Origin: Scyliorhinus canicula
Lineage: Eukaryota
NCBI RefSeq assembly: GCF_902713615.1
Contig: NC_052157.1
Location: forward strand, 76,201,411-76,265,410
Direction of reading: 5' to 3'
DNA length: 64,000 bases
The notes under the pieces are model-generated. The model was not told where the DNA came from and made no database searches. It saw only the letters and a list, made by a program, of their open reading frames with translations. Below, one piece after another: positions 5,808 to 54,757 of this stretch; the stretch's first letter is position 1, and every line of letters begins with the position of its first letter. The translations under genes and the position numbers were made by a program.

Positions 5808-5843
5808 CACTTTGTTGAATTTCAGCCTTGAGTTCCTTTATTT
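5808..5843 (-). CDS. Host coiled-coil gene, micro-exon 10 (36 nt, EIKELKAEIQQS)
   Basis: ttgcag|AAATAAAGGAACTCAAGGCTGAAATTCAACAAAGTG|gtgagc; phase 1-1; paralogous to exon 53757-53792. Confidence 0.75.
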
Positions 5844-6254
5844 CTGCAATCACCGTAAAGCATTTGATCAAGAACGTTATATTATGTTTCTCCAGACATT
5901 TATTAGTTTGTCAATTACAGGTTCACGATTGCTAGCAAACGGCCCGATGACAACACAATGGACATGTTTTTAGCAGTTTTCTAGTTGAAGGAATTTGCAG
6001 ATGTATAATTCGACAAAATGTTCCAAATACCTCCGTTGGCATCATGTGGAATGATGCACTATCCTCCATGATAGTAGCTGAGGCAATATAGGACATTCAA
6101 CATCCTATTTGAAGATAACTAGCCCCGGCGGGCATAATTTGAATAGCAAATATAATTTACGTGGAACGCGTCTTTGGCATGAGCCTTTGCAGAAGGCCTC
6201 TGTGTAACTTTAAATTGGCATCAAATAAAGACCACTAACTGGGAGAGATGGCTT

Positions 6255-6605
6255 TAGAACATAGAACAGTACGGCACAGAACAGGCCCTTCGGCCCTCGA
6301 TGTTGTGCCGAGCAATGATCACCCTACTCATGCCAACGTATCCACCCTATTCAAGTAACCCCCCCACCCCCACCACCACACACATTAACCTTATTTTTTA
6401 GGACACTAAGGGCAATTTAGCGTGGCCAATCCACCTAACCCGCACATCTTTGGACCGTGGGAGGAAACCGGAGCACCCGGAGGAAACCCACGCACACACG
6501 GCGAGGACGTGCAGACTCCGCACAGACAGTGACCCAGCCGGGAACTGAATCTTGGACCCTGGAGCTGTGAAGCATTTATGCTCACCACCATGCTACCGTG
6601 CTGCC
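6255..6605 (-). mobile_element. HE1-type tRNA-derived SINE
   Basis: Near-identical (reverse complement) to 53117-53468; tRNA-like head and (TTCTATG)n tail. Confidence 0.9.
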
Positions 6606-7084
6606 TTCTTTTATTATCTTATATAGGAGATCACACATACGGGAGATCGCCACTTTGACACTGCTGGCGAGTGACAGACGCAGTCGAAAACAACGATTCG
6701 TCATTTGGAGCTGCATTTAACACCACGGAATTCAGAAACAGCTGAAAGCTGCGAAAGACGGAGCCAAAGCTGACACAATAAAGACAATGTGGAATAAATT
6801 ATGTAGTTCACCTTCATCTTTTTAAAAGATGGAAACATGTTCAAAAGTATGATTGTTGGTAATTTAAGACAGCAATATCAATATGCATTATAAGCCATTT
6901 GTTAGACCAAAACAGCAGTTAATATCAAACTTAGAATTTTAACTCATCACATTACGTCCTAACAAAGCTGAGATAGATTTTGACTTTTTGATATGGAGCC
7001 TTCATGTAAAACCCAACCAGTGCTCAATTGTTGGTTAGTTTTGGTTTACTGTAGCTGAATATTCTTGCTTTTAATACACTTATA

Positions 7085-9890
7085 GCATGGAAGAAGGTAA
7101 ATACGCATGTGTGCACATTGAAATTGGCGAGTACGATGGTGTGTGTGTTTCACAGAGACGTGGGAACAAGGGTATTATGGCTGGCATCTAAATGTACATC
7201 GATATGTGGTCTATGGAAAGGATAAGCAGATGGGCAAAGGGACGGGGTTGCATTGTTAGTACCGAATTAAGTTAAAAAGAACAGCAAGGCGCGATATAGG
7301 ATCAGAATGCATACCATCTCTGTGAGTAGTGTTGAGCAATGGCAACGGCGAAAAGACCCTCATTGCTGTTATGCAAAAGCACCCTAGCAGTTATCAGGGT
7401 GTGGGGCAGAAAATAAATAATGAGATAGAAAAGGCATGTAAAAAAAGGCAAAGTTGCAATAATCATGGGGGACTTCAATATGCAAGTGGACTGGAAAACT
7501 CAGTATCGTAGTGGATCCTAAGAAGTGGAATTTGTGAAATGTCTGTGGGATATTTATTTGGAGCAGCTTTTGACAAAACCGACGAGGGTGCAAGCAATTC
7601 TGGATGTGCTTATGTGTAATGAGGTAGACTCGATTAGGGACCTTATGGTGGAGGAACGCAAAGGGAGCAGTGAGCACAAAATGATAGAATTTGTCACGTA
7701 GTTTGAGAGGGAGAAGCTTAAATGTGATGCGACGGTATTATAATTAAAACAAGGGTAACTGCAAAGACATGAGGGAGGAGATTATCAATTTTTTTTGGAA
7801 AAATAAGCTAGCAGAGAAGACACTGGAACTGCAATGACAGGACGTTTCGGCTGTTCTTCGGGAGGCACAGCAGAAATTCACCCAAGGAGGAGGAAACATG
7901 CTAATGGGATGACAAGGCATCCATGGTTGAGGAGGGATGTCAAGCTCAGCATGAAAGCAAAATAAACTGTTTGCAAATTGGTGCCGATTAGATGAAGCTA
8001 GAGGATTGGGAAGCCTTGAATAGCGAGATTAAACAATAAGGGGGTAGAAGATGAAATATGAGTGCAAGCTAGCTAGTAAGATGAAAGAAGATGGGAATCT
8101 TATTTTTTAATATTTAAAAGGTAAGAGAGAGGCAAAAATAGACATTGGACCACTCGTAAACGTGGTAAGAGCAGTGATAATAGGAAACAACGAAATTGCA
8201 GACGTACTGAATAGGGACATTGCATAAGTGTTCACCGTGGAAGACACCAGTGGGATGCCGGAGCTCCAGGATAATCAAGAGCCAGAGGTGAGCTTTGTGG
8301 CCGTCATTAATGAGAGGATCTTATGGGAGCTGAAAGTTGTGAAGGTGGATAAATCACCTGGAGCGAATGCACTACAACCCAGTGTTCCAATACAGATAGC
8401 TGAGCTCATTGTGGACGCATTGTTGGTGATCTTTCAGGAATCACTGGAAGAACGGAGGGTTCCAGAGGACGGGAAAGTTGCTAATATAACACCGCTGTTT
8501 AAGAATGGAGGGAGGCAAGAGACGGGAAAATATAGGCTGGTTAGCCTGACTTCCGTTTGATTTTAGATTGCATTATTAAACACCAAATCACGGAGGAGCT
8601 GGAAGTCCATGATAACAAAATTATAAATCGTCAAGGCTATTACAAGGGGAGGTCTTAGCGGACACATATGTGAGAATTATTTGAGGAGGGAACACGTATA
8701 TTCAACAAAGGAGAACCAGTGGTTGTGATTTATTTAGATTTCCAGAAGGTCTTTGACAAGGTACTGCGTAAGATATTTCTAATTTAGTTAAGAGCCCATG
8801 GTGTATGGAGAACATCCTGGTATGGATAGAGGGTTTTCTGACTGGCTGAAGGCGGAGCGTGGGGATAAGGGAGTATTTTTCAGAGTGGTGGCCGGTAAAT
8901 TGTGGTGTGCCTCATGAGTCTGTGCTCGGAACACATCTTCTCACAATGTATATTAATGATCTGGAAGACGGAACTGAATGCACTGTTTCTAAGTTTTCAG
9001 ATGATGCAAAGATCTGGAGATGTTCAGGTGGTATTGTGGAAGCACGAGGGCTGCGGAAGGACTTGTACAGACTCGAAGAGGGGGGAAAGAAATGACAGCT
9101 GGTATGCAATGTTGGAAAGTGTTAGGTTGTGCACTTTGGAAGGAGGAATCGACGCACAGAATACCTTCTAAATGGGGACATACTTAGGAATTCAGAAGCA
9201 CTAATGTTCTTGACATATTGTTCAAGATTGTTAAGGTTAACGTGCAGTTTCCGTCGCCAGTTACGAAGGCAAATGTAATCATAACATTCATGTCTAGAGG
9301 AATGGTTTACAAGACCAGGGATGTTCGACTGAGGCTGTATAAACTTTGGTCAGACAGCATTTGGAATGTTGTACACAGTGTTGGGCCCAGTACTAAAGTA
9401 AAGATGTGCGGGTCTTGGAAAGGGCCGAGATGATATTCACAAGAAAGATCCCGGGAATGAAGAATTTGTCATATGAGGGACGGTTGAGGACCATGGGTCT
9501 ATTCCCGTTGGAGTTTAGAAGGATGATGGAGAATCTTGTTGAAACGTACAGGATACTACGCGGCCTGTGTAGAGTGTACATGGAGAGGATGCTTCCAGTT
9601 GCAGGAAAAATAGAACCAGAAGACAGAATATCAGACTAAAGAGACGATCCTTCATGGCAGAGAAGAGGAGAAATTTCTTCTGAGTGTTGAGCTCTGCCGC
9701 AGAAGGCTGTGGAGGCCAAATCACTGAGTGTCTTTGAGACAAAGGCAGACACATTATTGAATAATAAGTAGGTCAGCGGTGTTGGGGAGAAGGCCAGAAG
9801 AAAGGGAATGGCAAAATATCAGCCGAGTGAATGGCGAGGCAGACTCGATGGGCCGAGTGGCCTCCTTCTGCTCTTATGACTTATGGTCTA
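7085..9890 (+). mobile_element. CR1-type LINE, ORF2 (APE+RT) and 3' UTR, degenerate
   Basis: IIMGDFN, KSPG, ANITPLFK.G, YRLVSLTSV, YLDFQKVFDKV, YINDL, SKFSDD. Confidence 0.92.
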
Positions 9891-10924
9891 ATTTATTTCG
9901 CTCGATATTTGTTTTTACTTGAAATTCTACATCAGCCCTTCCAAGTGGAGTGAACTAGTCACACGAAGAGCCCATTCGAACAGATCACCCGCTTCAATCA
10001 ATAAAGTTTTCCAATGCATTAACATGTTGTGTACAGTAATTCACATTCTTTTATTGAATCACTAATTAAGAAGAATTGATGGAGGAGTTACTCATGCATT
10101 TCATTACGCGGATATATTTGAACCAAGGCGCCGGTTTGTCAACGACTATGTTAATTCCGCTGTTCAGGAACTCTTAACAAACAAGAAAATGTACACCATG
10201 CGTCCGTTGGAACCTGCGGTACTTGTACCAGTTCTGCTGAAGAGTCTGCAATTCTGAAGCGAAATGTAATAACATGTTCACATAGATAATAAACTTAGAA
10301 ATATCACTATGACAAGTCTCCAACCTTATATTTTTTTACAGATGAACATCAATACTCTTTCCAGCAGAAACACAGCCTCAAACAAAAGGAAACCACCACT
10401 GCATAGAGACTGGTATTGATGAGACGATTGCAGCTTCCTTTTCGTACAGTTTCTTCACGCTATTTATTGGTTGCGTAATCCTGATCACATCGAGAGATAA
10501 GTAGAAGGTTTATCTTTGATGAGTATCTTAAATGTCGCGTGAAATAGGCATGCTTTAGACAAAAATAAGTGAATAAATGTTGAAGATAGAATAATTGTCT
10601 ATCCCTCGGAGAGTGCTTTGCAATGCCTTGTTTCTCAAAGTGGTGGAAGTGGGATCATTGAATATTCTTTAAGTCCGTGGTTTATCTATTTTTTCAACAT
10701 GATATCCGAAGTTATCTGCACTGGATGGTCATTGCTAAACTCAACAAAAATGGATCACCTATGATATTATTGAATGCCGGCACAGGTTCTAGAATGTTAA
10801 TGACCTACTTATTTTCCTGTTTTGTCTATTCCAGTAATCGCAGTTCGTTGAGCTCCTGTTCAATGAGACAAACGTTTTTGCTGTGCATGTAGATGCTGCC
10901 ATTCTGCTACTTTGTTTCCATTTT

Positions 10925-11072: not shown

Positions 11073-12519
11073 TGAAATTGAATTACTGTTTGATTATAAC
11101 AAGGATGTGTTAAAATATGTAATAAATACAACTGGATAACAGCAAGTTAGTAACTGCTACGCGCTTTGATTGTCCATCCTCCACTCACAAACACAAAACA
11201 AACATGAGGGGGGTTAAAATATTGAGGATGCGGGTCAAAAGATTGCTTAAAATAGTGGTTTTTGTCTTGTTCACTAACAATACGCTTGCACGTCTCAGTC
11301 TACGTTCGCCAAGCTGTACTCAAATATCTCGGAGAAATCGTGCCCCTGCTTCATCAAACTTTCCTTTCAGCTTGTGGCCTGTCTTCAGTAATTGTATTTT
11401 AAGTAATGCAAAACCCACATGCTTAATGGGGAGAGAGGTAGCCGGTTATATCTGGAGAGAATTACGAATTACTGGATAAAATCAGTAGATTCTGATTTTT
11501 TTCTTTAAGCATCCTTTAATGGTGCTGGTGTAGATAGATTCGTCCATATTCCCTACCAGTTCACAAACATAGTGTTTCATTTTCCTTCCGCTTCCATTTG
11601 TGATACGTGCTTCGTTGTAAGTACATGTCCATATATCATCCTTGGATCACAAATAGAACTGCAAAAATGAGAGAAAGGGCGGAATATGGAAAGGAACAGA
11701 AATGTTACAGTGCATAGCAAATTCAATAGATGTTCTCTATGATAATGCTCAGAAAATAGTGAAAGAAGTAACCTCGGCAAACAAAATCTGTAACTGTATG
11801 TATCTAACCCGTTCACAGTCGTCTATTTAAATCAATTATTTGTTGAATAGGCTACCTTTTTCACTGTATTTCAACTTTTCACCTTTTAAGGAATAACGGA
11901 AGAGGAAAATTTTGCGATTCTTGAGGAAGTGAAACGTTTAGAAATCACAATGCAAGTTTGGCAGAGCATTCCGAATGCAATTGTTAACACTGGGAACATG
12001 TTGCAGTGAGCATACAGTTGCAGCGTTGACAGACAGCCATGCATCTTGGCATTGGTTTTCAGGGTTAAACTAACGCGCATGCCACAACCGTCCATTCAAC
12101 GCCGCGAACGATAACCACCTGAGGCAACTCAACTCCTAATTCATCCGAAGTGTTCACTTTGGGGAGACTCACGACGGAACATGCACATCTGACCAAATTT
12201 TCAACACTTAGTACTACATCTCTGCTCTTGCACTACGATCTGTTTCAACGATTTATCTTGTATGGACGTTGGACACCTCCTCGTTTTACCAACGTATATG
12301 GACATTGGGAGAGTGTAGAAGATGTAACTGCTCATTTTTTAGTACTTTACTTAAGTTCACAGCGCTGGAAACCTGGCATTTTTCAATTCCCAGGAGAGCA
12401 GATACGTTGGCTATTTGATGAATTATTCCTTTTTAATGGGACGCTCATTCTTGGGGAAGTACTTTACAATAAATTGCCTCAACGTTAATTACGTTTGGAA
12501 ACTAGGTGGCAGGGAAATA

Positions 12520-12880
12520 AAGTAATTGCACGTCAAATCAGAGGGATTGGGCTGAAGAGTAGCGGGGCGAAAAGAACGTCGGGTTCGTTTCACCGCCGGC
12601 GGTTTTCTCGTTGCACCGGCAGTGCACCTAACCCACAGGTTTCCGGGCGGCGTGGTTTGGCTAAAATACGAAATCTCATTGGTAGATGGCAGGAATGGAG
12701 TGCCCAGTTCATAGTACGTGTTTGGGAAAATTGAGAATGAATAGAGGCAGGGCGCAAACTAAGGCATCGTTCATTGGTCGATGCATCTGTTATCCAGACA
12801 ACGTTTAGGCCAATACGTTTAATTTCCCTACTCTGCATTTTTTTTAATATGCGCGCTCTTCGAAAGAGATGGTAGTATAT
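12520..12880. promoter_or_regulatory. CpG-rich promoter-like island
   Basis: Four CCAAT/ATTGG boxes (12546, 12678, 12773, 12810), overlapping Ets and GC boxes TTCCGGGCGG (12641-12650), RFX-like GTTATCCAGACAAC (12789-12802); locally CpG-rich and non-repeat. Confidence 0.45.
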
Positions 12881-13574
12881 CGGGCAGAAAATGTCTTAAA
12901 TAAATTAGCAAATTGCTGCACACCTGCATCCTTTAAAGCGTCTTGGCAGACTTGCAACTCTGGAATGGCAATACATGAGAGCTAAGCATGTTGTCAACAT
13001 TCCTCAGAGAAATCCCTTCCCCGATCCCCCCTCCCCAACCATGCCCAATCATCGAACTCTCCACTACACTGTTTATCAATTGCAGCACATAAAATGGCGT
13101 TCGAAAACCGCTCAAGGTATTCCCATGCAGCGACTGCATCTCGTACGTTCATTCGTTGCATTCGAAGCACCACTGTCAAGGTCAACAGCACGGTTACACT
13201 CAATGTTCTATGATTCATATTCGTACATCTCGAAGCTCATGTTTGACAGCCATTGTGTATTGCGTTTTAAGTAAAAGCAAAAGTTAATAATTACACCGTG
13301 CTGGAATTTCAGGATAATTCCGAGCCAGGCTGTATTTGAGTGCAGGTCCGCAGCGAAATGCAACTTTATCCTAAGTCCCGTCGGTAGACTTCTCCAAATG
13401 ATCAGCGGAATGGTGCTGAGTATGGTATTTGCATTGACTGTTTTTGAAAATTAAACTTGTATATAGCAGTGTAACTCACATATTTTTGGCGAGGTAAGAC
13501 TCATTTACTTGTTTGCGGCATTGCATCTTGCCAATGAATGATATACGGGTGAAGCCATATATTTACAGAGCCTA

Positions 13575-15248: not shown

Positions 15249-15249
15249 C

Positions 15250-15348
15250 TATTATACAATACAACATAATACAATCTAATAGAATATAATACAATGTAAT
15301 ATAATATTATATATATATATATATAATATATATATCAGAGAGAGAGAG
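15250..15348. repeat. AT-rich, (AT)n and (AG)n microsatellite
   Basis: Directly visible. Confidence 0.85.
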
Positions 15349-15619
15349 TACTTCGGTTTAAGATGGATCAGTTGAATACCTCATGCACATGATTAGTTTA
15401 CACTTTATATAGATTGTCATTGCGCTCGCGCTTTTTATGATCCTGTATCTGAAAATGTGCTCTCTCAACGCTGACCTATCAATCACTGGAATATGCTTCT
15501 ACTGCAGCTAATGCTGACTGTATATTTCACCGAGTCGAATTGCAAAACGTCCAAGCGAATACAAAATAGACAATTTGAATTGAGCAACAACTCAATGGCC
15601 TATAAGTATTAAAAACTAC

Positions 15620-15646
15620 CGGCGTCTTTTGCTTTGATTTTTTCGC
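15620..15646 (-). CDS. Host gene micro-exon 9 (27 nt, GEKIKAKDA)
   Basis: ttcttttctttcacattgacaccggaacag|GCGAAAAAATCAAAGCAAAAGACGCCG|gtagtt; weak donor, but size, phase and heptad register fit. Confidence 0.62.
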
Positions 15647-17188
15647 CTGTTCCGGTGTCAATGTGAAAGAAAAGAATATAAAATGTATAATATTTTATGA
15701 GTTCGAGGAGTTGCATCACCGGTCAAATAACATTCCCAACTTGATGCTTGGTCGATTCAAGTTTATTAAAATTATTCGTCTGTCTGCGGAGCCGACTACT
15801 AGTTGAGGGCTATGCAACAAATAATGATGGCACATGATATATTGCGCCTAATTGGTTAGTTCGATTATTTTATATTTTGCGCAGTTTGGTTGTTTTGATT
15901 GAAGTAATCAGAATCTAAAGTCAGCCTTTCACCATTTAACTCGGGCTTGCGTTTATAGTTTCCTATTGAACAAAGAAACAAACATTTTCAAAATAATACG
16001 GCAAAACGACTGCCAAAAATAAATGCCCACCTAAATCTTTTCGAGATCTTTGGCAATCGTTCAGCTCTTTAATACATAAAATGAAAAGTCCAAATTGAAA
16101 TATCAGAAAAATGCCTGGTGTCGAGCAACTTATATTGTATACTTCGAGAGATTATGGTTACTATAAGATGTGTTGATGTCATGACTTGAGTGTGCAGGGC
16201 AGAATTTCACAATTCGTAAAAATCAACAAACTGTGAATTGCGAGAAAGACCAATAACGTACGTTAAAATATCTTAGAGGTCCTGAGTAATGGGATAACAC
16301 GTCACAGTTGATATTTTAGGGAGGCATATGAGTTGATCCATTTAGGCAAATAGGGCCAATGGACGACGTTGAACAACAATACAAGGCAGATTAATCTGTG
16401 GAGGGAAATGAGACGTATGTGCGTACAACCCCGTTGAACGAGGCAGAGAAAATCCAGGACGTAGTTCCTGAAGCACGCAGTATCTGGGATTTCTAAAATG
16501 AGCAATTAGGAACGAAAGCAAATAATTTGTGACAACCACACAGAAAGCGAAGTGTCTGCCTAACTTGGAAAATTGTGTCCATCTTTAGAGGTAACAGTTT
16601 TCAAGATCAGAGTACGTTAAAAGTCTTTGAGAATATTGTTTAGGGATGCTCAAGCACGAGGAAATATAGCAACGGGAGAGGACTGGGAAATATTGGGCCG
16701 CCCCACGGAAAAAAAACGGGGCTGAAATTAGTTTTGATGAAGCTATTAATTTTCATTAACGTGATCGAAATGCAAAATGTTTCACATTATAAATGGTCAG
16801 GAAACCGTAGACAATAATTTATTGTCAATTGGGGAATAACACGATTTCGTGGCTGAAGGAAAAATGTGCAGCGGATGAATACACTCCGGCATGTACTGCC
16901 TACGATTGTTTTTGAGGAATGCTCGTTAAATATAATTTGCAACACTGTTGCGAATGGTTAGAGGGATTGGAATAATTAATTATTCATTTAGACAGCGAGG
17001 TTCTGCATAAGATAATATAGTACAGCCTGCAATGTATTCGATCTACAAGAAATAACATTTTGATTTTTATTACAAAATCATAATTTCTGTTCCACTCGTG
17101 CAGTGTTCTCCCTCGCGGTTAGCTGCACAGGATAAACCTCCGAAGTAATGAGTGCGCATAGAGCTGTCTCCCTAGAATTGCCTGCTGA

Positions 17189-18596: not shown

Positions 18597-18835
18597 AAGC
18601 ATAGTGGTAGTTCGGCCACAGTCTGTGCAGTGTCTGCATGTTCTCCCTGTATCTGTGTGGTTTTCCTCTGGTTGGTCCAGTTTCCTCCCACATGTCCCGA
18701 AAGACGTGCTGTGAGGTAATTTTAACGTTCTCACTTCTCCCGGAAAATGCGCTGCAATGTGGCGACGAGCGCCTTTTCACTATAACTTCATTGCAGTGCT
18801 AATTCATGTCTGCTTGCGAAAATAAGGTTAATTAC
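18597..18835 (+). mobile_element. SINE family 2, degenerate
   Basis: Core and tail similar to 17189-17495. Confidence 0.75.
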
Positions 18836-19593
18836 TTAATTAATTTTGAAGTTGATTGCATGTATAATGCATAGTTACTCTGATTGCAGGCAAAATACGT
18901 TTTGACGTCAGCTTTCCTTTAATCAATTTAAATGTTAGTGTCTTAGAATCTGCTTTCCCTGACCTTTTTTTATTTTTTCTGTAAAAAAGCAAATGAAACT
19001 TAACGTGTACACGACGTACAGCGGAAATATTAGCCTTGTAAGTAAAATCGAATTAGCCAACAGCGCAGTGTCAATGGACACGTCATGAGGTAGAAATGTG
19101 GATATGTTGTGTCTGGAATGGTATAGTTCATTGTTCGTTGAAAACCCTGCACTCTATCTGCTGTTAACTGCTACAGTGCTACCTCTCTTTCGGACAAAAC
19201 AACAATAATTGTTCACAATTACTTTCCACGTACATCGGAGTAGTGGTATTCATGGGGAAAAAACGGCACGCCATGAAACATTAAGTCCACAACCGGGAAT
19301 TTATCTTACATTCCGTGCCGGGCTTCCCCAGATGTTTGCTTTACATAAAAGCTGATAACATTTAAAAAATGTAGTAAAGTGAAGACGACTCCGGACTTGC
19401 ATAACGTGTCGAATTTAATTGCGTCAATTCAATACCTACATTAATGATTTCAGTTTTGGATAGTTATGTATACCGAACTATAACATGTAGAAAGTACATT
19501 ATATGCCCAACCTAACATGTTCTAATTCACTGTAGTTAGAGCTACCGAACGTAATTATGGCAATAGATTGCTACTGCCCAATTCAATGTCATC

Positions 19594-20053: not shown

Positions 20054-20090
20054 CTGAATCTTTTATGCTACTTTGGCATTTTGCTTAGCG
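20054..20090 (-). CDS. Host gene micro-exon 8 (37 nt as assembled; ALSKCQSSIKDS if one A is removed)
   Basis: cattatccattccag|CGCTAAGCAAAATGCCAAAGTAGCATAAAAGATTCAG|gtgacc; paralogous to exon 49606-49641 (DLSICQTSLKDL). Confidence 0.65.
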
Positions 20091-21077
20091 CTGGAATGGA
20101 TAATGTAACAGTTTTACACTTTACTGTTAAATAATTATGTTTGTAATTAGCCTTTCAACTTCTTAAAACTCCCTCATTTGGTAAGGTGTCACATTCTAGC
20201 ACATGTCCAATCGGCAATTAAACAGCAGAGGAGATTGATACAAATAAGAAATAAATGAACTGCACAGAAACAAGCATGTTGGCCCTTCACAACGGTGCGA
20301 CCATGCTGTCCGTTTTAATTAAAACTTTCGACATCTCCGGGGCTCTTATCCCTCTATTTCCACCCTTCTCATGTATTTGTCAAGACGCCATATAAAGGTT
20401 CCTATCGTACCTCCTTCCGCCTTGAACCTCAGTCAGCGAGTTCCAGCACCCCTACCCAATGGTATACTACTCTCGCAAATGGCCTCTACACATTGCTCCT
20501 CGTACCTTAAAGCTTTGTCCCATAATAATTGATTCTCACTTCCTTGGTAAAAGGTTCTGACTGTCCACTCTGTAAATGCACCTCATAATTCAGTAGAACT
20601 GTCGGTAGCCCCTCAATCTGCGGAGCTCCAGTGAAAACACACCGAGTTGACCTTAGCTTCATCATAGTTAGTGCCCTCCATACCATGGAACATCCTCGTA
20701 AGCCTCATCAGTACGCGCTCCAAAGCTTGCACCCACTTCTCACTCGTGGTGTGACCTACATTCAACGTATATTCCAAGCACGTCCGATCTGAGGCTCGAT
20801 ACATCTGCAACGTGATTTGTAGGTTTTCATTTACTCAATGCCCCGGGCGATACAGGCAAGCATACAATTTGCATTCCTGAATACATTCTCTACTTGCGTT
20901 GCCACTTTCAGTGACTTGTGGGCCTCTGCACCCTGATCTCTCAGTGTCAATACTTTTAGGAGTTCTACCATTTACTATATATTTCCCACCAGTATTAGAC
21001 CGTCCAAAAAGCATTGCCTCACGTTAGTCCATATTAAAGTCCATCTGCCATCTCTCCGCCCAAGTCATAAACGATCT

Positions 21078-29688: not shown

Positions 29689-29703
29689 CCGTCTTTATAT
29701 TTT
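29689..29703 (-). CDS. Host gene micro-exon 7 (15 nt, ENIKT)
   Basis: ctgatcacag|AAAATATAAAGACGG|gtaagtt; exon and both flanks resemble 51018-51032. Confidence 0.72.
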
Positions 29704-32429: not shown

Positions 32430-32965
32430 GTTCGGGGCGCAGTGATTAGACCTGGGGCTACAGCACTGAGGACTCGGATTCGAATCCCGGCCCTGGGTCC
32501 ACTGTCCGTGTGGAGTTTGCACATTCTCTGCATGTCCGTGTATGATAGAATTTACAGTGCAGAAGGAGGCCATTCGGCCCATCGAGTCTGCACCGGCTCT
32601 TGGAAAGAGCACCCTACCCAACCTCCACCCTATCTCCATAACGCAGTAACCCCACCCAACACTAAGAGCAATGTTGGACACTAAGGGCAATTTATCATGG
32701 CCAATCCACCTAACCTGCACATCTTTGGACTGTGGTAGGAAACCGGAGCACCCGGAGTAAACCCACGCACACACGGGGAGGATGTGCAGACTCCGCACAG
32801 ACAGTGACCCAAGCCGGAATCGAACCTGGACACTGGAGCTGTGAAGCAATTGTGCTATCCATAATGCTACCGTGCTGCCCGTGTGCATGTTTCACTCCTG
32901 CAATCAAAATATGTGCAGGTTAGGTGGATTGGCCACGCTAAATTGCCCTTATTTGGAATCAAAAA
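32430..32965 (+). mobile_element. Short SINE interrupted by an antisense SINE
   Basis: Head and core at 32430-32540 resume at 32881; similar to 39290-39510. Confidence 0.75.
32541..32880 (-). mobile_element. HE1-type SINE variant nested in another SINE
   Basis: GGGCAGCACGGTAGCA head on the minus strand; short (CC)GTGT duplication at the junctions. Confidence 0.85.
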
Positions 32966-38328: not shown

Positions 38329-38364
38329 CGAATTTAGATAGAAGTTCGTGGCAGTCGCTGAGCT
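38329..38364 (-). CDS. Host gene micro-exon 6 (36 nt, ELSDCHELLSKF)
   Basis: tttcctgttgacattgcag|AGCTCAGCGACTGCCACGAACTTCTATCTAAATTCG|gtgaat; same xLSxC pattern as exons 4 and 8. Confidence 0.75.
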
Positions 38365-39289
38365 CTGCAATGTCAACAGGAAACATATGGACAATTAATT
38401 TCCAATAGAAACAAAACAGCTTCCGCATCCATTTCTGTCTTCAGATCTTAACCCTGCTCAGAATGGGAAATGTTCCTCCTCGAAAACGTTCAAAAATTCG
38501 GGGAGAAATGCATTTCAGATGCATCAGAATAGTTAATTCCTGATATCTCAGTGCAGCTTCATATCCATACATTTCTGAGATTGAATTATTTTTGAAACAA
38601 CTTATTTCACCCGATAAATTAAGTGAAATTAGATGAGCTGAGAAGTGACCACTCTGTAGCTATAAGAATGTTTCAGCATATTTTTCTCTTATTGCGACAT
38701 CTCTTCCGAGACCACGACACAATGACATCCTAAACTGTAGAAAGGTTGTTTAATTTTCTTACCTATCCCCGAGCTTGCTACAGTACTCTCGACAGTCGCG
38801 CACCATACTTAGTTTAAGTAAAATATAAATCTCTTTATCCATGGGCACCACCAGTTTTTCCTTCGATGCTTTTGAAGTAAACGGCATATTACCTTACATT
38901 AGCCATATTCGCTCATATTGTTACCTCTATTATTTTCATACGTTACCCCCCTCCACATGAAATCTGCTGTCCTTACCCTTCCCTCAAAGAAAAACGCCAT
39001 AAGGGTTGCGAAAAAATACGCTAACTGTCGTCTCGCTTTCTTAGCGAAATACCGTAAAATTGTTGTCGTCTTCCGAATTAATTACCATTTGGAAAGACGT
39101 TTTTTTTTCGAATCGTTCCCCAATTACCATTGTACGTGCCGACATACATTGGGTCACGCTTTGAAAGTGTTCGCTAGCCTTCCCATTTCGCATGTTTTTA
39201 TCTACTCCATCCCAACGACATTTCACGATATATCTTCTGTTCAAATTCAAAAACATTTCTGTATTATCACTCATATTTTTTCCATCGTG

Positions 39290-39512
39290 GGGCAGCACGG
39301 TGGCCTAGTGATTAGCACAACCGCCTCACGGCGCTGAGTTCCTAGGTTCAATCCCGGCTCTGGGTCACTGTCCGTGTGGAGTTTGCACATTCTCCCCGTG
39401 TCTGCGTGGGTTTCGCCCCCACAACCCAAAAAACGTGCAAGCTAGGTGGATTGGCCACGCTAAATTGCCCCTTAATTGGAAAAATGATTGGGTACACTAA
39501 ATTTATTTTAAA
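39290..39512 (+). mobile_element. Short HE1-related SINE
   Basis: GGGCAGCACGGTGG head, B-box GGTTCAATCCC, conserved core. Confidence 0.85.
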
Positions 39513-41000: not shown

Positions 41001-41455
41001 TGTAGCCTTTTTATGCATTGCAGGCCTTGTCACAGTCGACGGGGGTCCGTGTGGCTAGCCTGGGACTCGAACTTGGTCCGGTACTGTCTTTTGGCATCTT
41101 TGATGAATCTCCTTACATCATATCTGGATTTCTTGTATCGGCCAGAATCGCATGACTTGAACTCCTCAGACCTAGACTTCAGCAAGCAGTGGATATCCCA
41201 GTTCATCCAGGGTTTCCAGTTGGGAAACACGCGCATTAGCTTATTTGGCAGTCTTCTACACACTTACTATTGAAGTCAGTCACTGCAGTGGTGCACTCGT
41301 TCAGGCTGATCGCAGAGTTTTAAAATACGGGCCAGTCCACTGACTCTAAGCAATCCCGCACGAGATCATCCGATTCCTCAGACCAATATTGCACGACGTT
41401 GTTTGACGGGTTCTCAAGCTTCAGCTTTTGCTTCTAAGCCGGGAGCAGGAGCACG
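41001..41455 (-). mobile_element. Rex1/Babar-like LINE fragment
   Basis: RVFPNWKPWMN.DIHCLLKSRS..FKS.D...YKKSRYD.RR.IKDAKRQYRTK. Confidence 0.7.
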
Positions 41456-41790: not shown

Positions 41791-41794
41791 GTTC

Positions 41795-42360: not shown

Positions 42361-42469
42361 CACCCTATGCACCCTAGTCCCCTTACTATCGCCCTTCCAC
42401 AACCCCTAGCTCCTCAGTTTCAGTGGCCAAGGGCTCAAAGAGAAGTGGGGGGGGGCATAGGGCCTCACT

Positions 42470-43097
42470 CTCTCTGTATGATTCTCTCTCTCTCCAGCCA
42501 TCTCTCTCTCTCCCTTTGTCTCTGCCACTCTTTCGCTCTGTCACTGTCTCTTTCCCTCAATCTCCAGCCTTCTCACTGCTTATCATCGGCCACCCCGTTC
42601 TCTCTCTCTGCTCTCCATACCTCTCTACTTTATCTTTCGCATTCTCTCTCTCACTCCAACCATCTCGCACACTCACGAGCCATATTTCCCTCTCACCGGC
42701 CATCTCTCAGTCTCTCCAACCATCTCTCTCTCTCTCTCCAGCCATCTCTCTCTCATCAGCCATCTCTCATCTCTCTCTAGCCATCTCTCTCTCTCTCCAG
42801 CCATCACTCTCTCTCTCCAGCCATCTCTCTCTCATCAGCCATCTCTCTGTCTCTCTCTCCAGCCATCTCTCTCTCTCCAGCCATCACTCTCTCTCTCCAG
42901 ACATCTCTCTCTCTCTCACCAGCCATTTATCTCTCTCTCTCTCCAGCCATCTCTCTCTCTCCAGTCATCTCCAGCCATCTCTCTCTCTCTCTCTTCAGCC
43001 ATCTCTCTCTCTCTCTCTGCAGCCATCTCTCTATCTCTCTCCAGCCATCTCTCTCTTTCTCTAGCCATCTCTCTCTCTCTCGATCCATCTCTCTCTC
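42470..43097. repeat. (CCAGCCAT(CT)n) minisatellite, homopyrimidine-rich
   Basis: Directly visible tandem units. Confidence 0.95.
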
Positions 43098-43385
43098 AAA
43101 TAATTTATTGAGTAAATCAACAAATAAACTTGTGAGTTTGATGCTTCAATACTTTTGCTCGCTATTAAATAAACAAGATAGAATAAGAATAAACTATGAT
43201 TAGACTTGCACTCTGAGCTAACTCTCTATACCTTTGGTCACTAGTCACAATACACAAGAAAAGACGGGAAAACAGACTGAATCTGTCTTTATACCCCTTG
43301 TCCGTGCTGGCATTTAGTGATCACGTAGCTTTAATGCCTGTACATTAACCCCTTATGTGCATATATAGATATCCAGATCACTACA
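43098..43385 (-). mobile_element. Partial Gypsy-type LTR
   Basis: Minus strand begins TGTAGTGATCTG…AAGGGGTTAATGTA and contains TATAAA and AATAAA. Confidence 0.5.
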
Positions 43386-43619
43386 TCCCTCCTTCTCCCT
43401 GCTTCCTCTCTTTCTGATTCCCTCTGTCTCTGTCAGATGGATCAGATCAAACGGGGAACTTCATTAAAAGTTAGAAACTGGACAGACAATGGCTAATATT
43501 TCAGCATTGCAGCAGGTCGACATTCCTTTCAGCCGCAAACACACACCAAGAAAAGTGACACAACCATTGTTAACAAAATAAATGAAGGATAGTATTGGAT
43601 CCAAAAAGAAATCATAAAC

Positions 43620-45418
43620 AATGTGTTTCTATCAATGTGAGCGTTTGTGTGTGTCTGTGTCAGTGTGAGTGTGCTTGTGTGTCTGTGTCAGTCTGAGAGT
43701 GTTTGTGTGCCTGTATCAGTGTGAGTGTTTGTGTCTGTGTCAGTGTGATTATGTTTGTGCGTGTGTCAGTGTGTGTGTTTGTGTATCGGTGTCAGTATGA
43801 GTGTCTTTGTGTGTCTGTGTCAGTGTGAGTATATTTGTGTGTCTGTGTTTGTGTGCCTGTGTCAGTGTGTGTGTGTCTGTGTCAGTGTGAGTGTGTTTGC
43901 GTGCCTGTTTCAATATGAGTGTGTTATCATGAGTGTGTTGTATGTGTGTCATTGTGATTATCTTTGTGCGTCTGTCATTGTGTGTGTGTTATTATGAGTG
44001 TGTTTGTGTGTGTCTGAATGTGAGTGTGTTTGTGTGTGTATCAGTGTGAGAGTGTCTGCGTGTGTGTCAGTGTGAATGTGGTTAAGTGTGTGTGTTTTTG
44101 TTTGTGTGTGTTTGATGTGTGTGCCGTTGTGTGTCTGCGTGAGTGTGTTTGTGTGTGTATCACTGTGGGTGTGTTGTGTGTCAGTGTGAGTGAGTTTCTG
44201 TGACTGTGTCAATGTGATTGTATTTGTGTGTTCGTATCAATGTGAGTGAATTTGTGTGTCAGTGTGACTTTGTCTGCGAGTTGTGTGTCAGTTTGAATGT
44301 GTTTGTGCGTGTCAGTGTGTTTTTGTGTTTCTGTTTCAGTTTGAGTCTGTTTGTGTGTCTGTGTCAGTGTGAGTGTGTTTGTGTGCGGGTGTCATTGTGT
44401 GTGTTTGTGTGTCAGTGTGAGTGTATTTGTGTGCCTGTGTCAGCGTGAGTGTGTTTGTGTGCCTCTGTCAGTGTGACTGTGTTTGTGTGTCTGGGTCAGT
44501 ATGTGTGTTTGTGTGCGGGTCAGTGTGTGTAATTGTGTGCTGTTTTATGTGTCAGTGTATGTTGTTGTGTATGTCAGTGCGAGGTGTCTGTGTGTGTGTG
44601 TCAGTGCGAGTGTGTTTGTGTGTCTGTGTCTGAGTGTGTTGCGTGTCTGTGCATGTGAGTGTGTTTGTGTGCCTGTGCCAGTGTGAATGTGTTTGTGTGT
44701 GTGTGACTCTGTGTGTTTTTGAGTGTATGTCAGTGTGAGTGTGGCTGTGTGTTAATGTGAGTCTGTTTCTGTGTCAGTGTGAGTGTGTCTGTGACAATAT
44801 GAGTGTGAATGTGTGTCTGTGTCAATGTGAGTGTTACTGAGTGTGTGTCGGTGTGTGTGTGTTGTGTGCCTGTGTCAGTGTGAGTGTGTTTGTGTGCCTG
44901 TGCCAGTGTGAGTGTATTTGTGTATCTGGGTCAGTGTTAGAGTGTTTGTGTGCAAGTGTCAGTGAGTGTTCTTGTGTGTCTGGGTCATCATGTGTGTTTG
45001 TGTGCGTGTCAGTGCGTGTAGTTGTGTATTGTTTTGTGTGTCAGTGGGTGTTGTTGTGTGTGTCAGTGCGATTGTGTTTCTCTGTGTGTGTCAGTGCAAG
45101 TGTGTTTGTGTGTTTGTGTCTGTGAGTGTGTTGCGTGCCTGTGAGTGTGTTGTGTTAGTGTGTGTGTGTGTCTGTCAATGCGAGTGTGTTTGTGTGCCTG
45201 TGTCAGTGTGAATGTGGTTGTGTGTGTGTGTCAGTGTGTGTGTTTGTGTGTATGTCAGTATGAGTGTGGCTGTGTGTAAATGTGAGTGTGTTTGTGTGTC
45301 AGTTTGAGTGTGTTTGTGTGCCTGTGTCAATGTGAGTGTGACTGTGTGTCTGTGTCAATGTGAGTGGCAGTGAGTGTGTGTCAATATGTCTGTCAGTGTG
45401 TCAGTGTGTGTGTTGTGT
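43620..45418. repeat. ~1.8-kb GT-rich degenerate satellite (unit approx. GTGTCAGTGTGAGTGTGTTTGTGTGT)
   Basis: Directly visible. Confidence 0.95.
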
Positions 45419-45419
45419 G

Positions 45420-48400
45420 AAGGGAGTAAGAGGAAACGTGTAAGGCAGAGAAGCAATGGTCAAAAATCTAAAAGGGCCACAGGACAGGATAAAGTGAGGA
45501 AGGAGAGCTCAGTGAATATGTCCAGTAATACCAAAAGGTATAAGACTAGAGTAAAGCGAAACAGCAGGTTATTACGTGAAGACATTGATTCAAATATAAG
45601 AAAAATTAGGAGAAAGGCTAAAGGGAAAAATAACTGAGAAGAGGTTATTGACAAAGGTGAGAAGAGTCAAAATGCAGGTATAAAGGCCGACATACGAGTA
45701 TATTGCGTGAATGCTCGTAGTATTCGTAATAAGGTGAATATGTTGATGGCACAAACCATTGTGAATGACTATGATTTAGTGGTCATTACTGGAACATGGT
45801 AAAATGATGGTCAAGACTGGGATTTAAACATCCAAACTATTCGGAAGGACAGAGTGGATGGTCAGGGATGTGGTGCAGCTCCTTTACTTATGTTTGACAA
45901 CTGGACAGTATTGGGGGATGACATCAGTGGTATGTAGGATAAGTTTGAATCCATGCGGGTGGAAATCAGGAATACTAAGGTGAAAACCTCACTGGTGGGA
46001 GTAGTCTGTAGCCCACTAAATAGTAACAATATGGTGGGGCGGGCAATTAACAAATAAATAACTGATACATGTAGAAATGGTACCTCAGTTATCATCTTTG
46101 ATTATAAAATATCTGTTGATTGGTTGAACCAGATCAGTCAAAGCAGCTTTGAGGCTGAGTTGATAGAATGCATCGGCGATAGTTTCTTGGAACAGTATGT
46201 AATGGAACCTGCAAGGGAACAAGTGGTCCTGTGTATAGTCCGGTATAATGAGTCAGAATTGATTATTGGTCTCATTTTCAGGGCTCCTCTCGGAAGGAGC
46301 GATCACTATATGGCGGAATATAAAATGCAGATACATGGGTGAGAAGGTAAAATCAAAGAATGGTGTGTTATGCTTAAACAAAGGAGATGACAATAGGAAG
46401 AGGGAAGACCTTGCTAAGGTAGACTGGGAGCAACTACTTGATCGTGCAACAGTTGAAAAACAATGGAGAACCTTCCAAGCATGTTTTCACAGTGGTCAGC
46501 AAAAGATTATAATCAGAAAAAAGAAGGACGGTACAAAGAGGGAAAATCGACCGTCAATATGTAAGGAACGAAGGGAGAGTAGAAATCAAAGTCAAAATCA
46601 TACAAATGGCAATGATTAGTGGGAGATTAGAGGATTTGGAAATCTTTAGAGGGCAACAGAAAACAACGACAGAAGCAATAAAGAAGACTACGATAGTTTA
46701 TGAGATTAAGCTTGCTCAGAATATAAAGAACAGATTGCAAACATTCCTACAAAAATTAAAACAATAAAAAGAGTAGCTGTGGTAAATATTTGTCCTTTAG
46801 AGGATGAGAAGGGAAATTTAATAATGGGAGATGAGGAGACTTCTGAGGAACCGAACAGGTGTATTGGGTCTGACTTCACAGTGGAAGACACAAATAACAT
46901 GCCAGTGACTGATTGAAAAGAGGCTACGGCAGGTGAGGAACTTGAGACAATTGTTACCACTAAGCAGTTAGTGATGGGCGAGCTAATGGGAATGAAGGAA
47001 GAGAAGTCTCCTGGCCCTGATGGATGCGCCCAGGGTACTAAAAAATATGGCAAGGAAATTGAACAGGCACTCGTAATAATTTACCAAAATTCACTAGACT
47101 CTGGGTGGTGACCGCGGATTTCAAATTAGCAAACGTAACACCATTGTTTAAAAACGGAGGTAAAAAGAATACGGATAATTATAGGCTCGTTAGCTTAAAA
47201 TCAGTAGCAGGGATGATGCTGCAATCTTCCATCAAGGATGAAGTAGAGAGGGATCTGAATGGAAATTGTCCCATTGAACCGACGAGGCAGGGGATTATGA
47301 AAAGCAGGTCGTACCTGAGTAAATTAGTGGAATTGTTTGAGGACATTACAAGTATGATAGACAACGGGGAGCCAATGAATGTGATATATCTGGATTTCCA
47401 GAACGCCTTTAACAAGGTGCCACACATGGTTGCTGCATCAGATAATGATGCATGACGTTGAAGGTAAAGTAGTATCATTCGTACAGGATAAGTTAATTAT
47501 CAAGAAGCAAAGAGTGAGGATTAAAACGTGTTTTTGTTTTATTGGCAATCAGTGCCTAGTGGTGTCCCTCAGGGATCAGTGTTCAGTCCACAATAGTTCA
47601 CAATTTACAGAGGTCATTTGGAGTCGAAGACCAATGCAATATGTCTAAATTTGCAGGCGACACTAAGATGAGTGTGTAGACAAAAATTGCAGAGAATACT
47701 GGAAGTCTGCAGACGGATTTTGAAAGTTTAAGTGAATGGGTAGAGTCTAGCAGATGGAACACAATGATAAAAATTTGAGGTTATCCATTTTAGTAGTCAT
47801 AACAGCAAAATGGATTATTATTTAAATGATAAAATATTGAAACAGGCTGCTGTGCAGAGGGAGCTGGGTGTCCTCGTACATGTGTTGCAAAACTTAGGTT
47901 TGCAAGTGCAGCAGGTAATTCTGAAGGCGAATGGAGTTGTGTCCTTCATTACTAGAAGGATGGCATGTATGACTCGGTAGGTTATGATGAAACTGTATAA
48001 GATGTTAGGGAGGTCACACCTGGAGTAGTATGTCCAGTTTTGATCTGCATACCTGAGAAAGGACGTACTGGCGCTGGAGGGTGTGCAGGGGCGATTCAGG
48101 AGGCTAATCCCAGAATTCAGGCGGTTGGATTAGGAGGAGTTGTTTAATAGACAGGGAAGTACCTCGATTGAATTTAGAAGGATGTCTTGGGATCTCATAG
48201 ATACATAAAACAATGAAGCGGATATGTAGGATTGATTCGGGCACGTTGTTTCCACTCGCCGGTGAAAGGAGACCGAGGGGGCATAATCTCAAAATAAGGA
48301 TTAAGGACTACGTTTAGGAGGAACTAATTCACACAAAGTCTTGTGAATTAATGGAATTCTCTGCCAAGTGAAGCACGTGAGGCTCCTTGATTAAATGTTT

Positions 48401-48936: not shown

Positions 48937-48963
48937 CTTTTTCTTTTACGTTATAAGATCCTT
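48937..48963 (-). CDS. Host gene micro-exon 5 (27 nt, EGSYNVKEK)
   Basis: gttgttttcacccttgtaaacag|AAGGATCTTATAACGTAAAAGAAAAAG|gttgta; weak donor, fits size and register. Confidence 0.62.
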
Positions 48964-49605: not shown

Positions 49606-49641
49606 CTAAATCTTTCAGTGATGTTTGGCAGATGCTCAGAT
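49606..49641 (-). CDS. Host gene micro-exon 4 (36 nt, DLSICQTSLKDL)
   Basis: ttttactgtattgtag|ATCTGAGCATCTGCCAAACATCACTGAAAGATTTAG|gtgaga. Confidence 0.78.
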
Positions 49642-51017: not shown

Positions 51018-51032
51018 CCGTCGATATTTTAT
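51018..51032 (-). CDS. Host gene micro-exon 3 (15 nt, DKIST)
   Basis: ttgttttctgattcacag|ATAAAATATCGACGG|gtaagtt. Confidence 0.75.
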
Positions 51033-53756: not shown

Positions 53757-53792
53757 CTAATTGTTCCACTCTATATTTCAATGTTTCTATTT
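53757..53792 (-). CDS. Host gene micro-exon 2 (36 nt, EIETLKYRVEQL)
   Basis: atttttgtttcag|AAATAGAAACATTGAAATATAGAGTGGAACAATTAG|gtgagc. Confidence 0.78.
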
Positions 53793-54424
53793 CTGAAACA
53801 AAAATATGCTCAGATGCATTCGTTCAATACAATTTCAATCATTTGATACCTGGGATGCTTTCTAATTGGTAACATCTCTGCTTGTGAATTCCAACAACTT
53901 CAATTCTTCGTGCAACATCTCTCCAATTTTAAATATAAAATGAAAGATCAAGTCGCGCCTATCAAGACGTAGAGACATGCCAAAGTATTTTCGTTACTAT
54001 TTGGACTGTACCTGGCCTATAATTTCGGAACTTTAGCATGAGGTAGCATCGAACAGTTTGCAAATAGCAAATAGATATCAATTATATATTCAATATTAAT
54101 TACGTTGCATGACGGCTGGTAATGCGGCAGAAAAAAATGAAAACTAATTTTACTGGTTGTTGTAACAACATGTGCCAATTTATATCAATGTAGGATGTAA
54201 ACGTATGCCAGGTGTCTATTTTTAAAATCTGAAATATCACAAATTCGGCAATGATTTGCTTGGAAGAACTGTGTGTTGTCGTCCGGAGATTGAGCATCAT
54301 TCGGTGTTGCGCGAAAACATAACAGGACTTTGTCGTTCAGGATTTAGTTTGCTGTACTCGAAGTTTAGACTGACACTAACGTACACTAATTAATTTTGTT
54401 GCTATGGAATACGCAATCGAGTCA

Positions 54425-54680
54425 TTTAATTCCTCCATTGCAGAAGGGAGTCATTTTGTCCTTGGAGTCTACCCCGACCCTCTGAAAGTGGGCAGTACCA
54501 TATCCTCGTAATTAAACCTAAGTTGTAAATCTTTGGACACATCAATGCAACCTGTACATATTTGGACTTGAGAGTAAACCGCAGCACCCGAAAGAAATCC
54601 AGGCAGACAGGGGGAGTCTCCCAAAGTCCAAATTTAACCCGAGTTCCTGGGGCTTTGAGGCAGCAATGCCGTCCCACATG
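54425..54680 (-). mobile_element. Degraded SINE
   Basis: Weak match to the HE1-type core. Confidence 0.55.
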
Positions 54681-54730
54681 TTTAATCAATGCAAAAATAT
54701 GAGCTTGGAGGGGCGAATTGTGTAATTTAC

Positions 54731-54757
54731 CTCTAGTTTTGTCATTGAGTTCATTTT
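54731..54757 (-). CDS. Host gene micro-exon 1 in this window (27 nt, ENELNDKTR)
   Basis: ctgtctcctgcctcttgcag|AAAATGAACTCAATGACAAAACTAGAG|gtaaat. Confidence 0.75.

What the first reader, a model, noticed from the sequence alone, without database searches (positions are those of the whole stretch)
5808..54757. Exon sizes encode coiled-coil geometry: 27+36 nt = three heptads, and each 15-nt exon inserts a stammer
Core positions in the spliced peptide are L4,K7,I11,L14,V18,L21,I24,L28,C31,L35,L38,Y42,K45,L49,C52,L56,F59,I62,L66,C69,I73,S76,I80,K83,I87,L90,I94. Spacing alternates 3-4 except for a 3-3 step exactly at each 15-nt exon (21 to 24, 59 to 62). The 38-residue unit is therefore 5 heptads + 3, which is a stammer in coiled-coil terms. 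Every 27-nt exon also places a Lys at the same core position (7, 45, 83). This regularity independently supports the exon calls. It differs from the plain 21-nt heptad exons known in chicken BG and butyrophilin tails.
Basis: partly seen in the sequence, partly recalled or inferred. Interest (0 to 1): 0.7.

Follow-up and report, generated by a model that had tools for sequence, protein, structure and literature searches.

The report
Shark coiled-coil gene of tiny exons

Summary
Partly confirmed. The minus strand between 5808 and 54757 carries a real array of micro-exons. All have AG/GT sites and the same split-codon phase (phase 1). Heptad-patterned 36-nt exons occur 6 times, against 0.05 expected by chance and 0 on control strands or phases.

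A 27+36 pair gives 21 residues, which is three heptads. A 15+36 pair gives 17 residues, and the only register breaks in the joined peptide are -4/+3 shifts (stammers) at the 15-nt exons.

Three details fail:
One extra A puts a stop in frame.
- There is no regular 38-residue (27-36-15-36)n super-period.
- The core-lysine rule holds for 3 of 4 of the 27-nt exons.

Best reading: a length-modular, probably dimeric coiled-coil rod with Cys and Lys at d positions. It works like chicken BG heptad-exon tails but uses a different exon grammar. Earlier scan notes describe two similar arrays elsewhere in this genome.

The parts
54731..54757 (-). Short exon A1, 27 nt, peptide xNELNDKTR (core L, K)
   Evidence: AG/GT sites and open in phase. 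Splice score sum is 18.6 against 6.6 for the next candidate in its 4.2-kb interval.
53757..53792 (-). Long exon B1, 36 nt, xIETLKYRVEQL (core I, L, V, L)
   Evidence: Passes the heptad and splice filter. Splice sum is 17.7.
51018..51032 (-). Short exon C1, 15 nt, xKIST (core I); first stammer
   Evidence: Top splice candidate in its interval, 18.8 against 6.5. It shares 11 of 15 exon bases, the cacag acceptor and the gtaagtt donor with C3.
49606..49641 (-). Long exon D1, 36 nt, xLSICQTSLKDL (Cys type)
   Evidence: Best hit in the splice-blind profile scan. It is 75% identical to D4, and the similarity runs 26 nt into the acceptor flank.
48937..48963 (-). Short exon A2, 27 nt, xGSYNVKEK (core Y, K); the weakest call
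   Evidence: AG/GT and open, but the donor GTTGTA is poor and it ranks only 9th by splice score in its interval. It lies 643 nt after D1, like the other short introns that follow a long exon.
38329..38364 (-). Long exon D2, 36 nt, xLSDCHELLSKF (Cys type)
29689..29703 (-). Short exon C3, 15 nt, xNIKT (core I); second stammer
   Evidence: Top splice candidate in an 18-kb interval, 15.7. Homologous to C1 including its flanks.
20054..20090 (-). Long exon D3, Cys type, 37 nt: one extra A gives an in-phase stop. An inner AG would give a 30-nt form, 20054-20083.
Evidence: Sequence read. Alignment to D1 and D4 shows a single-base insertion.
18964..18978 (-).
   Evidence: Top splice candidate in its interval, 17.9 against 5.3. 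The sequence is A-rich and low in complexity, so some doubt remains.
16031..16066 (-).
15620..15646 (-). Short exon A5, 27 nt, xEKIKAKDA (core I, K)
   Evidence: AG/GT and open. It ranks 2nd in its interval and is the best coil-like candidate there. It lies 385 nt after D4.
12924..12959 (-).
   Evidence: Splice sum is 15.2.
11856..11882 (-).
   Evidence: rank 2 in its interval.
5808..5843 (-). Long exon B6, 36 nt, xIKELKAEIQQS (core I, L, I, S); last exon recognised
41272..41304 (-). Possible dead Cys-type exon relic (LNECTTAVTDF), wrong phase, no usable splice pair
   Evidence: Profile score is 15.0 against a best of 14.0 on the control strand. Borderline.
10291..10323 (-). Possible dead Cys-type exon relic (LETCHSDISKF), no donor
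   Evidence: Profile score is 14.1. Sequence read. Borderline.

Best explanation
This is part of a minus-strand gene, or at least a long-maintained gene segment. Its coding sequence here is written entirely in symmetric phase-1 micro-exons that alternate short (27 or 15 nt) and long (36 nt). It encodes an alpha-helical coiled-coil rod of about 117 to 134 residues, roughly 17 to 20 nm long.

The basic unit is a 21-residue repeat split as 36+27 nt. Its a positions are Leu, Ile or Tyr. Its three d positions are typically Cys, Leu and Lys. Where a 15-nt exon stands in place of a 27-nt one, the unit has 17 residues and the heptad register jumps by -4/+3, which is a stammer.

Every exon has the same phase and a length divisible by three. 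Duplicating, losing or skipping a short+long pair therefore changes rod length without touching the frame, and for 27+36 pairs without touching the register.

The buried Lys, the Cys at d and the attractive g-e' pairs suggest a parallel in-register dimer. In an oxidising compartment it could be stapled by d-d' disulfides.

Shown here: the exon anatomy, the statistics and the in-silico register. Inferred: splicing, dimer state, disulfides and cellular location.
For: - 36-nt exons: 6 heptad-patterned examples against 0.05 expected and 0 in five strand/phase controls.
- Splice-blind scan: the four Cys-type exons rank on top and all carry correctly placed AG and GT.
- Short exons: A1, C1, C3 and C4 are by far the best splice candidates in their intervals.
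- 15-nt exons with splice sum of at least 15: four on this strand (three of them in the array), 0 on the plus strand, 0.28 expected.
- C1 and C3 are homologous, flanks included.
- The 14 exons alternate short and long without exception.
- Conservation: exon identity among the 36-nt exons averages 0.46, and 0.47 to 0.75 among the Cys type. Their flanks average 0.26 to 0.31, about the random level, so the exons were kept while the introns diverged to saturation.
- Register: breaks occur only at the 15-nt exons, all c-to-a. The score is 6.4 to 7 SD above shuffles.
- Positions: a is hydrophobic in 17 of 18. The d positions are L, I, C, K, A or S. g-e' pairs are 4 attractive and 0 repulsive. There is no Pro.
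- The stammer definition is taken from PMC4786415.
Against:
- One of the 14 exons (D3) carries a frameshift and stop, so the locus may be decaying.
- A2 has a poor donor, and A5 and A6 have only modest splice scores.
- No start, transmembrane, globular-domain or terminal exon was found in the window.
- Pooled pN 0.41 against pS 0.54 among the Cys-type exons gives no clear sign of protein-level purifying selection beyond the core positions.
- The exons were partly found by requiring AG/GT, so conservation of splice sites is not fully independent evidence.
- My splice matrices and register scores are home-made approximations.
Confidence: 0.6

Rival explanations
1. It is a dead or dying fragment, a pseudogenised copy of a coiled-coil micro-exon gene family. 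The exons are real by descent but are no longer spliced into a functional mRNA.
For: D3 has a frameshift with an in-phase stop. There are two possible exon relics without splice sites. No RNA holder was listed. No start or end of a gene lies in the window. An earlier scan note on a similar array 3.3 Mb away (s1-240112) also reports that no RNA was found; I did not check that note.
Against: 13 of 14 exons keep an open frame and both splice sites, although their introns have diverged to random-level identity. Because all exons are symmetric, one broken exon can simply be skipped. The absence of listed RNA is uninformative here: the second search had only 3 sampled words, and 27- to 36-nt exons hold few or no 31-letter words.
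Confidence: 0.25
2. The gene is real, but the 15-nt exons are not constitutive. They could be skipped, tissue-specific or false calls, in which case no stammer is written into the main product.
For: Exons of 15 nt are hard for the spliceosome to define. C4 is a low-complexity A-run. By chance 0.8 heptad-compatible 15-nt candidates are expected per window at the loose threshold.
Against: C1, C3 and C4 each have by far the best combined splice score in their interval. C1 and C3 are homologous, flanks included. Leaving the 15-nt exons out puts two 36-nt exons side by side and gives a worse break, -2/+5 residues, than the stammer.
Confidence: 0.2
3. The exon-like segments are chance open frames between chance AG and GT dinucleotides in AT-rich intergenic DNA.
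For: Thousands of AG..GT pairs exist in the window. Generic composition filters do not separate the strands.
Against: 6 observed against 0.05 expected for the 36-nt class, and none on the controls. The exons share a Cys-Gln...Lys-Asp motif and have flank homology. They all share one strand, one phase and strict alternation.
Confidence: 0.02

Closest known systems
Chicken BG genes (butyrophilin family): cytoplasmic tail of many heptad micro-exons
   Same: A long tandem series of tiny exons with split codons at both ends, each holding a whole number of residues and together predicted to form a coiled coil. Exon number varies between genes, so tail length is modular (PMC4046983).
   Different: BG exons are 21 nt, sometimes 24, so one exon is one heptad, with 13 to 36 per gene. 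Here three heptads are split 27+36 and a 15-nt class is added. No Ig V exon or transmembrane exon was found in this window. Introns here are kilobases long and full of transposons.
Mammalian butyrophilins (a few cytoplasmic heptad exons before the B30.2 exon)
   Same: Phase-1 micro-exons encoding heptads (PMC4046983 introduction).
   Different: Butyrophilins have only a few such exons, followed by B30.2. No B30.2-like open frame was seen in the 5.8 kb downstream of the last exon (only two of the ORFs there were scanned against Pfam).
CD23 (FCER2) stalk
   Same: An alpha-helical heptad stalk (PMC6791321). From my own knowledge, not checked here, it is built of 21-residue repeats, each on its own 63-nt exon, and the repeat number differs between species.
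   Different: CD23 is described as a trimer without a regular core Cys. Its repeat is one exon, not two. No C-type lectin exon was found here.
Documented coiled-coil stammers (MITF/TFE leucine zipper; stammers in trimeric adhesin stalks)
   Same: A 3-residue insertion in a heptad background giving a local 3-3 core spacing (PMC6954422; PMC4786415).
   Different: Those are single, structurally verified stammers inside ordinary exons. Here each of up to three stammers would be contributed by its own 15-nt exon, and none has been verified structurally.
Two similar micro-exon arrays noted earlier in the same genome (s1-240112 and s1-253616)
   Same: According to the notes: alternating 36/27-nt phase-1 micro-exons with a 21-residue Cys-containing repeat, and a cassette that adds 63 residues in frame.
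   Different: Neither note mentions 15-nt exons. I could not read those sequences, so family membership is unverified.

Membership tests
Alpha-helical coiled coil | Heptad a/d pattern of hydrophobic residues kept over many heptads, without Pro | tested here: met
   17 of 18 a positions are hydrophobic. There is no Pro. The register score is 6.4 to 7 SD above shuffles.
Alpha-helical coiled coil | High probability from a standard predictor (Marcoil, DeepCoil) or a confident multimer model | not testable with these tools
Pfam gave only sub-threshold hits to generic coiled-coil families.
Coiled-coil stammer | Insertion of 3 residues (or deletion of 4) in the heptad register, giving 3-3 core spacing | tested here: met
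   c-to-a register jumps occur exactly at the 15-nt exons and nowhere else. The definition is from PMC4786415. This is sequence-level only.
BG/butyrophilin-type heptad-exon tail | Tandem micro-exons with split codons, each encoding heptad sequence | tested here: met
   14 phase-1 exons, but sized 27, 36 and 15 nt rather than 21 or 24 nt.
BG/butyrophilin-type heptad-exon tail | Ig V-like exon and transmembrane exon upstream in the same gene | tested here: inconclusive
   None was recognised in the 9.2 kb upstream, which is largely a LINE. The gene may start beyond the window.
BG/butyrophilin-type heptad-exon tail | B30.2 exon (butyrophilins) or a stop/3'UTR exon (BG) after the heptad exons | tested here: inconclusive
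   No B30.2-like open frame was seen, and there is no convincing terminal exon in the 5.8 kb downstream. Only two ORFs there were scanned against Pfam.
CD23-like type II lectin stalk | 21-residue heptad repeats followed by C-type lectin domain exons | tested here: inconclusive
   The 21-residue repeat is present. No lectin-like open frame lies in the window.
Expressed gene | Spliced RNA joining the exons | not testable with these tools
No RNA holder was listed.

The most novel reading that the evidence does not exclude
Sharks have a gene family in which coiled-coil geometry is written at the exon level. A Cys/Lys-bearing 21-residue repeat is always split into symmetric 36+27-nt exons. A dedicated 15-nt exon class replaces the 27-nt exon to insert a stammer at chosen points. 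Exon choice or exon turnover would then tune both the length of a disulfide-stapled rod and its local supercoil twist.
Probability: 0.25. Interest if true: 0.65.

Novelty: new variant of a known kind. Interest (0 to 1): 0.42.

Why it matters
If these exons are transcribed, this would be a second, independent exon grammar for building coiled coils from micro-exons, alongside the 21-nt heptad exons of BG and butyrophilin genes. It would also be the first case I know of in which a coiled-coil discontinuity (a stammer) has its own exon.

That would make two things directly testable. One is whether stammers are selected structural features. The other is whether rod length and twist are varied by exon skipping or duplication.

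It also flags a gene type that automatic annotation and k-mer-based expression searches are likely to miss, because the exons are at or below typical word sizes.

Tried and rejected

2. The look-up of sequencing runs, two searches. The 5.9-kb search returned only small-share holders guessed to be RNA, and I suspect repeats. The 60-nt search centred on exon B1 had only 3 sampled words and listed no holder. Searches hit a busy machine. Both results are uninformative and are not evidence of silence.

3. Homology. I therefore did not send spliced peptides to any further tool, so there was no large-database homology search, no AlphaFold model and no complex test.

4. The look-up of encoding contigs with a window ORF, tried as a way to walk beyond the window: nothing on record.

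5. Generic exon hunting by composition and splice score does not separate the strands. Only heptad-specific criteria do.

6. Intron homology between units: none except 26 nt next to D1 and D4, so the duplication history cannot be reconstructed.

7. A terminal exon after 5808: no convincing candidate. The strong AG-15-GT candidate at 4963-4977 (GFLLE) lies in a duplicated 620-bp element and is not coil-like.

8. Rfam: no hits.

9. Literature searches for shark heptad exons, 63-bp repeat exons and exon-level coiled-coil design found nothing specific.

10. Earlier scan notes searched by sequence: blank, which means nothing according to the operators.
Full report
**What the window is**

The window is AT-rich vertebrate DNA, about 40 to 45% GC, full of SINE and LINE copies and long compound microsatellites. 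Earlier notes of this scan call the genome the small-spotted catshark. I did not verify the species myself. Rfam finds nothing at gathering score.

The finding's end coordinates are exon ends on the minus strand.
- 54731-54757 is a 27-nt segment with AG before and GT after.
- 5808-5843 is a 36-nt segment of the same kind.

Both read as 2 nt + whole codons + 1 nt, so the flanking introns are phase 1. I scanned the minus strand for AG-(15/27/36)-GT segments open in that phase.

The exon that should give L66, C69, I73 and S76 is 20054-20090. It is clearly a sister of the other Cys-type 36-nt exons, but it is 37 nt long. One extra A sits in a run of four. An inner AG would give a 30-nt in-frame version, but that version breaks the heptad pattern in three places.

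- 18964-18978 (15 nt)
- 16031-16066 (36 nt)
- 12924-12959 (36 nt)
- 11856-11882 (27 nt)

**Actual architecture**

With these included, the 14 exons alternate strictly short then long: (27+36)(15+36)(27+36)(15+37*)(15+36)(27+36)(27+36). In residues the pairs are 21, 17, 21, 17 (broken), 17, 21, 21. There is no regular 38-residue super-period.

Five of the seven long exons share the pattern Leu-x-x-Cys-Gln/His-x-x-x-Lys/Ser-Asp/Lys-x. The first and last long exons lack the Cys but keep the same hydrophobic spacing.

**Is it more than chance?**

I required a heptad pattern, polar residues elsewhere, no Pro, Gly or Trp, and a combined splice score of at least 6.

| Test | 36-nt class | 15-nt class | 27-nt class |
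|---|---|---|---|
| Minus strand, this phase | 6 | 4 | 2 |
| Five other strand/phase combinations | 0 | 0 to 1 | 0 to 2 |
| Mean of 100 second-order Markov simulations | 0.05 (max 1) | 0.82 | 0.22 |

- A BLOSUM profile scan that ignores splice sites ranks four Cys-type exons on top. Their scores are 15.6 to 24.9, against a best of 14.0 on the control strand. All four have AG and GT in exactly the right place and phase.
- For the short exons, I ranked every in-phase open AG-15/27-GT candidate in each interval between long exons. The called exon leads by a wide margin in four intervals:
  - A1: 18.6 against 6.6
  - C1: 18.8 against 6.5
  - C3: 15.7 against 13.8
  - C4: 17.9 against 5.3
- A5 and A6 rank second in their intervals. 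A2 ranks ninth because of a poor donor.
- Four 15-nt candidates on this strand have a splice sum of at least 15 in this phase, against 0 on the plus strand and 0.28 expected. Three of the four are the array's own exons. The fourth lies in a duplicated element downstream and is not coil-like.
- C1 and C3 are homologous, flanks included.

The long exons are solid, the three 15-nt exons are well supported, and the 27-nt exons are supported more by context than by splice strength.

**Age and selection**

- Pairwise identity among the 36-nt exons averages 0.46, and 0.47 to 0.75 among the Cys type.
- Their flanks average 0.26 to 0.31, which is random level.
- Self-BLAST finds no intron similarity between units apart from 26 nt beside D1 and D4.

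The duplications are therefore old, and exon sequence, frame and splice sites were kept while the introns diverged to saturation and filled with transposons. That argues for long-term function, with one caveat: part of the exon set was found by demanding AG/GT. Pooled pN 0.41 against pS 0.54 among the Cys-type exons is not decisive. Conservation sits in the core positions and the Cys-Gln / Lys-Asp motif.

**Coiled-coil geometry**

I ran a register-tracking dynamic programme on the joined peptide, scoring a/d against the other positions with a penalty for register jumps.
- It keeps one continuous heptad register across every exon junction except at the 15-nt exons.
- There the register jumps from c to a. 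That is a deletion of four residues, or equally an insertion of three.
- The score is 6.4 to 7 SD above shuffles of the same residues.
- An insertion of three residues is the definition of a stammer. It gives a local 10/3 periodicity and overwinding, absorbed in known structures by a short 3-10 segment (PMC4786415).
- Leaving the 15-nt exons out does not restore the heptads. Two adjacent 36-nt exons give a -2/+5 shift, a harsher break.

By position:
- a is hydrophobic in 17 of 18 cases.
- d is a mix of Leu, Ile, Cys, Lys, Ala and Ser.
- g-e' pairs are 4 attractive and 0 repulsive.
- There is no Pro and no N-glycosylation sequon.

The core Lys in the 27-nt exons holds for A1, A2 and A5, but A6 has Ser.

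Its regular super-repeat does not survive.

**Most likely mechanism**

The array encodes a rod of about 117 to 134 residues. All exons are symmetric, so pairs can be duplicated, lost or skipped without a frame change, and a 27+36 pair also preserves the register. This is the same logic that gives chicken BG molecules their variable tail length from 21-nt heptad exons (PMC4046983).

A buried Lys once per 21 residues, Cys at d, and only attractive g-e' pairs fit a parallel in-register dimer. Outside the cell the Cys could form d-d' disulfides. Inside the cell they would simply be small core residues. The lack of sequons leans weakly towards a cytoplasmic location. These points are inference.

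If D3 is really broken, it must be skipped. Skipping it together with C3 or C4 leaves a clean chain with two stammers.

**What could not be done**

- There is no transcript evidence. I sent nothing of those places to any search tool afterwards.
- Neither run search listed an RNA holder. With 27- to 36-nt exons and 31-letter words that is nearly uninformative.
- A spliced peptide has no contiguous reference. I then sent it nowhere else, so there is no database homology, no AlphaFold model and no complex prediction.
- No start, transmembrane, Ig, lectin, B30.2 or terminal exon was found in the window. Upstream is mostly a LINE with endonuclease and reverse transcriptase. Downstream holds a gypsy-type integrase remnant and a duplicated 620-bp element.
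- What protein the rod belongs to therefore stays open.

**Comparison and verdict**

The array works like the heptad micro-exon tails of BG and butyrophilin genes. Membership in that family is not established, because its other defining exons were not seen. The 21-residue unit recalls the CD23 stalk, where to my knowledge each repeat is one 63-nt exon. Here the unit is split in two, carries Cys and Lys in the core, and no lectin exon is present.

Earlier notes of this scan describe two similar arrays elsewhere in this genome (s1-240112 and s1-253616). If they are truly related, this is a small gene family. I could not check them.

I rate this a new variant of a known kind. Interest is moderate until RNA shows that the exons, and above all the 15-nt ones, are used.

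Noticed in passing
window 55100-59100 (+): A LINE with endonuclease and reverse-transcriptase open frames (Exo_endo_phos_2, RVT_1) sits just upstream of the first recognised exon, on the opposite strand. More diverged copies lie at about 20300-23400, 25800-26800 and 28350-29030.
   Followed up: partly
window 42400-45420: Two large compound microsatellite arrays lie inside the A2-to-D2 intron. One has a 20-nt unit rich in TC ending CCAGCCA (42.6-43.1 kb). The other is a roughly 1.8-kb TG-rich array with a 28-nt unit (43.6-45.4 kb), with a sharp GC-skew flip between them.
   Followed up: no
window 309-925 and 4531-5122: Direct repeat of about 620 bp, 77% identical by BLAST. The downstream copy holds the strongest AG-15-GT candidate in the window (4963-4977, GFLLE, splice sum 20.1), 830 nt after the last coiled-coil exon. 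It is not coil-like, and the other copy has lost the sites.
   Followed up: partly
window 2081-2479 (-): Open frame with Integrase p58 C-terminal and Tf2-1 SH3 domains: a remnant of a Ty3/gypsy-type retroelement.
   Followed up: partly
window 41272-41304 and 10291-10323 (-): Two Cys-type exon look-alikes (LNECTTAVTDF, LETCHSDISKF) without usable splice sites or phase. They may be dead exons of the same array, but their scores are only just above the control strand.
   Followed up: partly
window 6401-6605, 32676-32880, 39290-39470, 60940-61106 and others: At least six copies of one SINE-like element in both orientations, up to 90% identical.
   Followed up: no
window 12250-13250, 15250-16950, 18750-19250, 38750-39250: CpG observed/expected is about 1.0 to 1.5 in 500-nt windows here, against a window median of 0.68. 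Several of these stretches surround the micro-exons. The cause is unknown.
   Followed up: no
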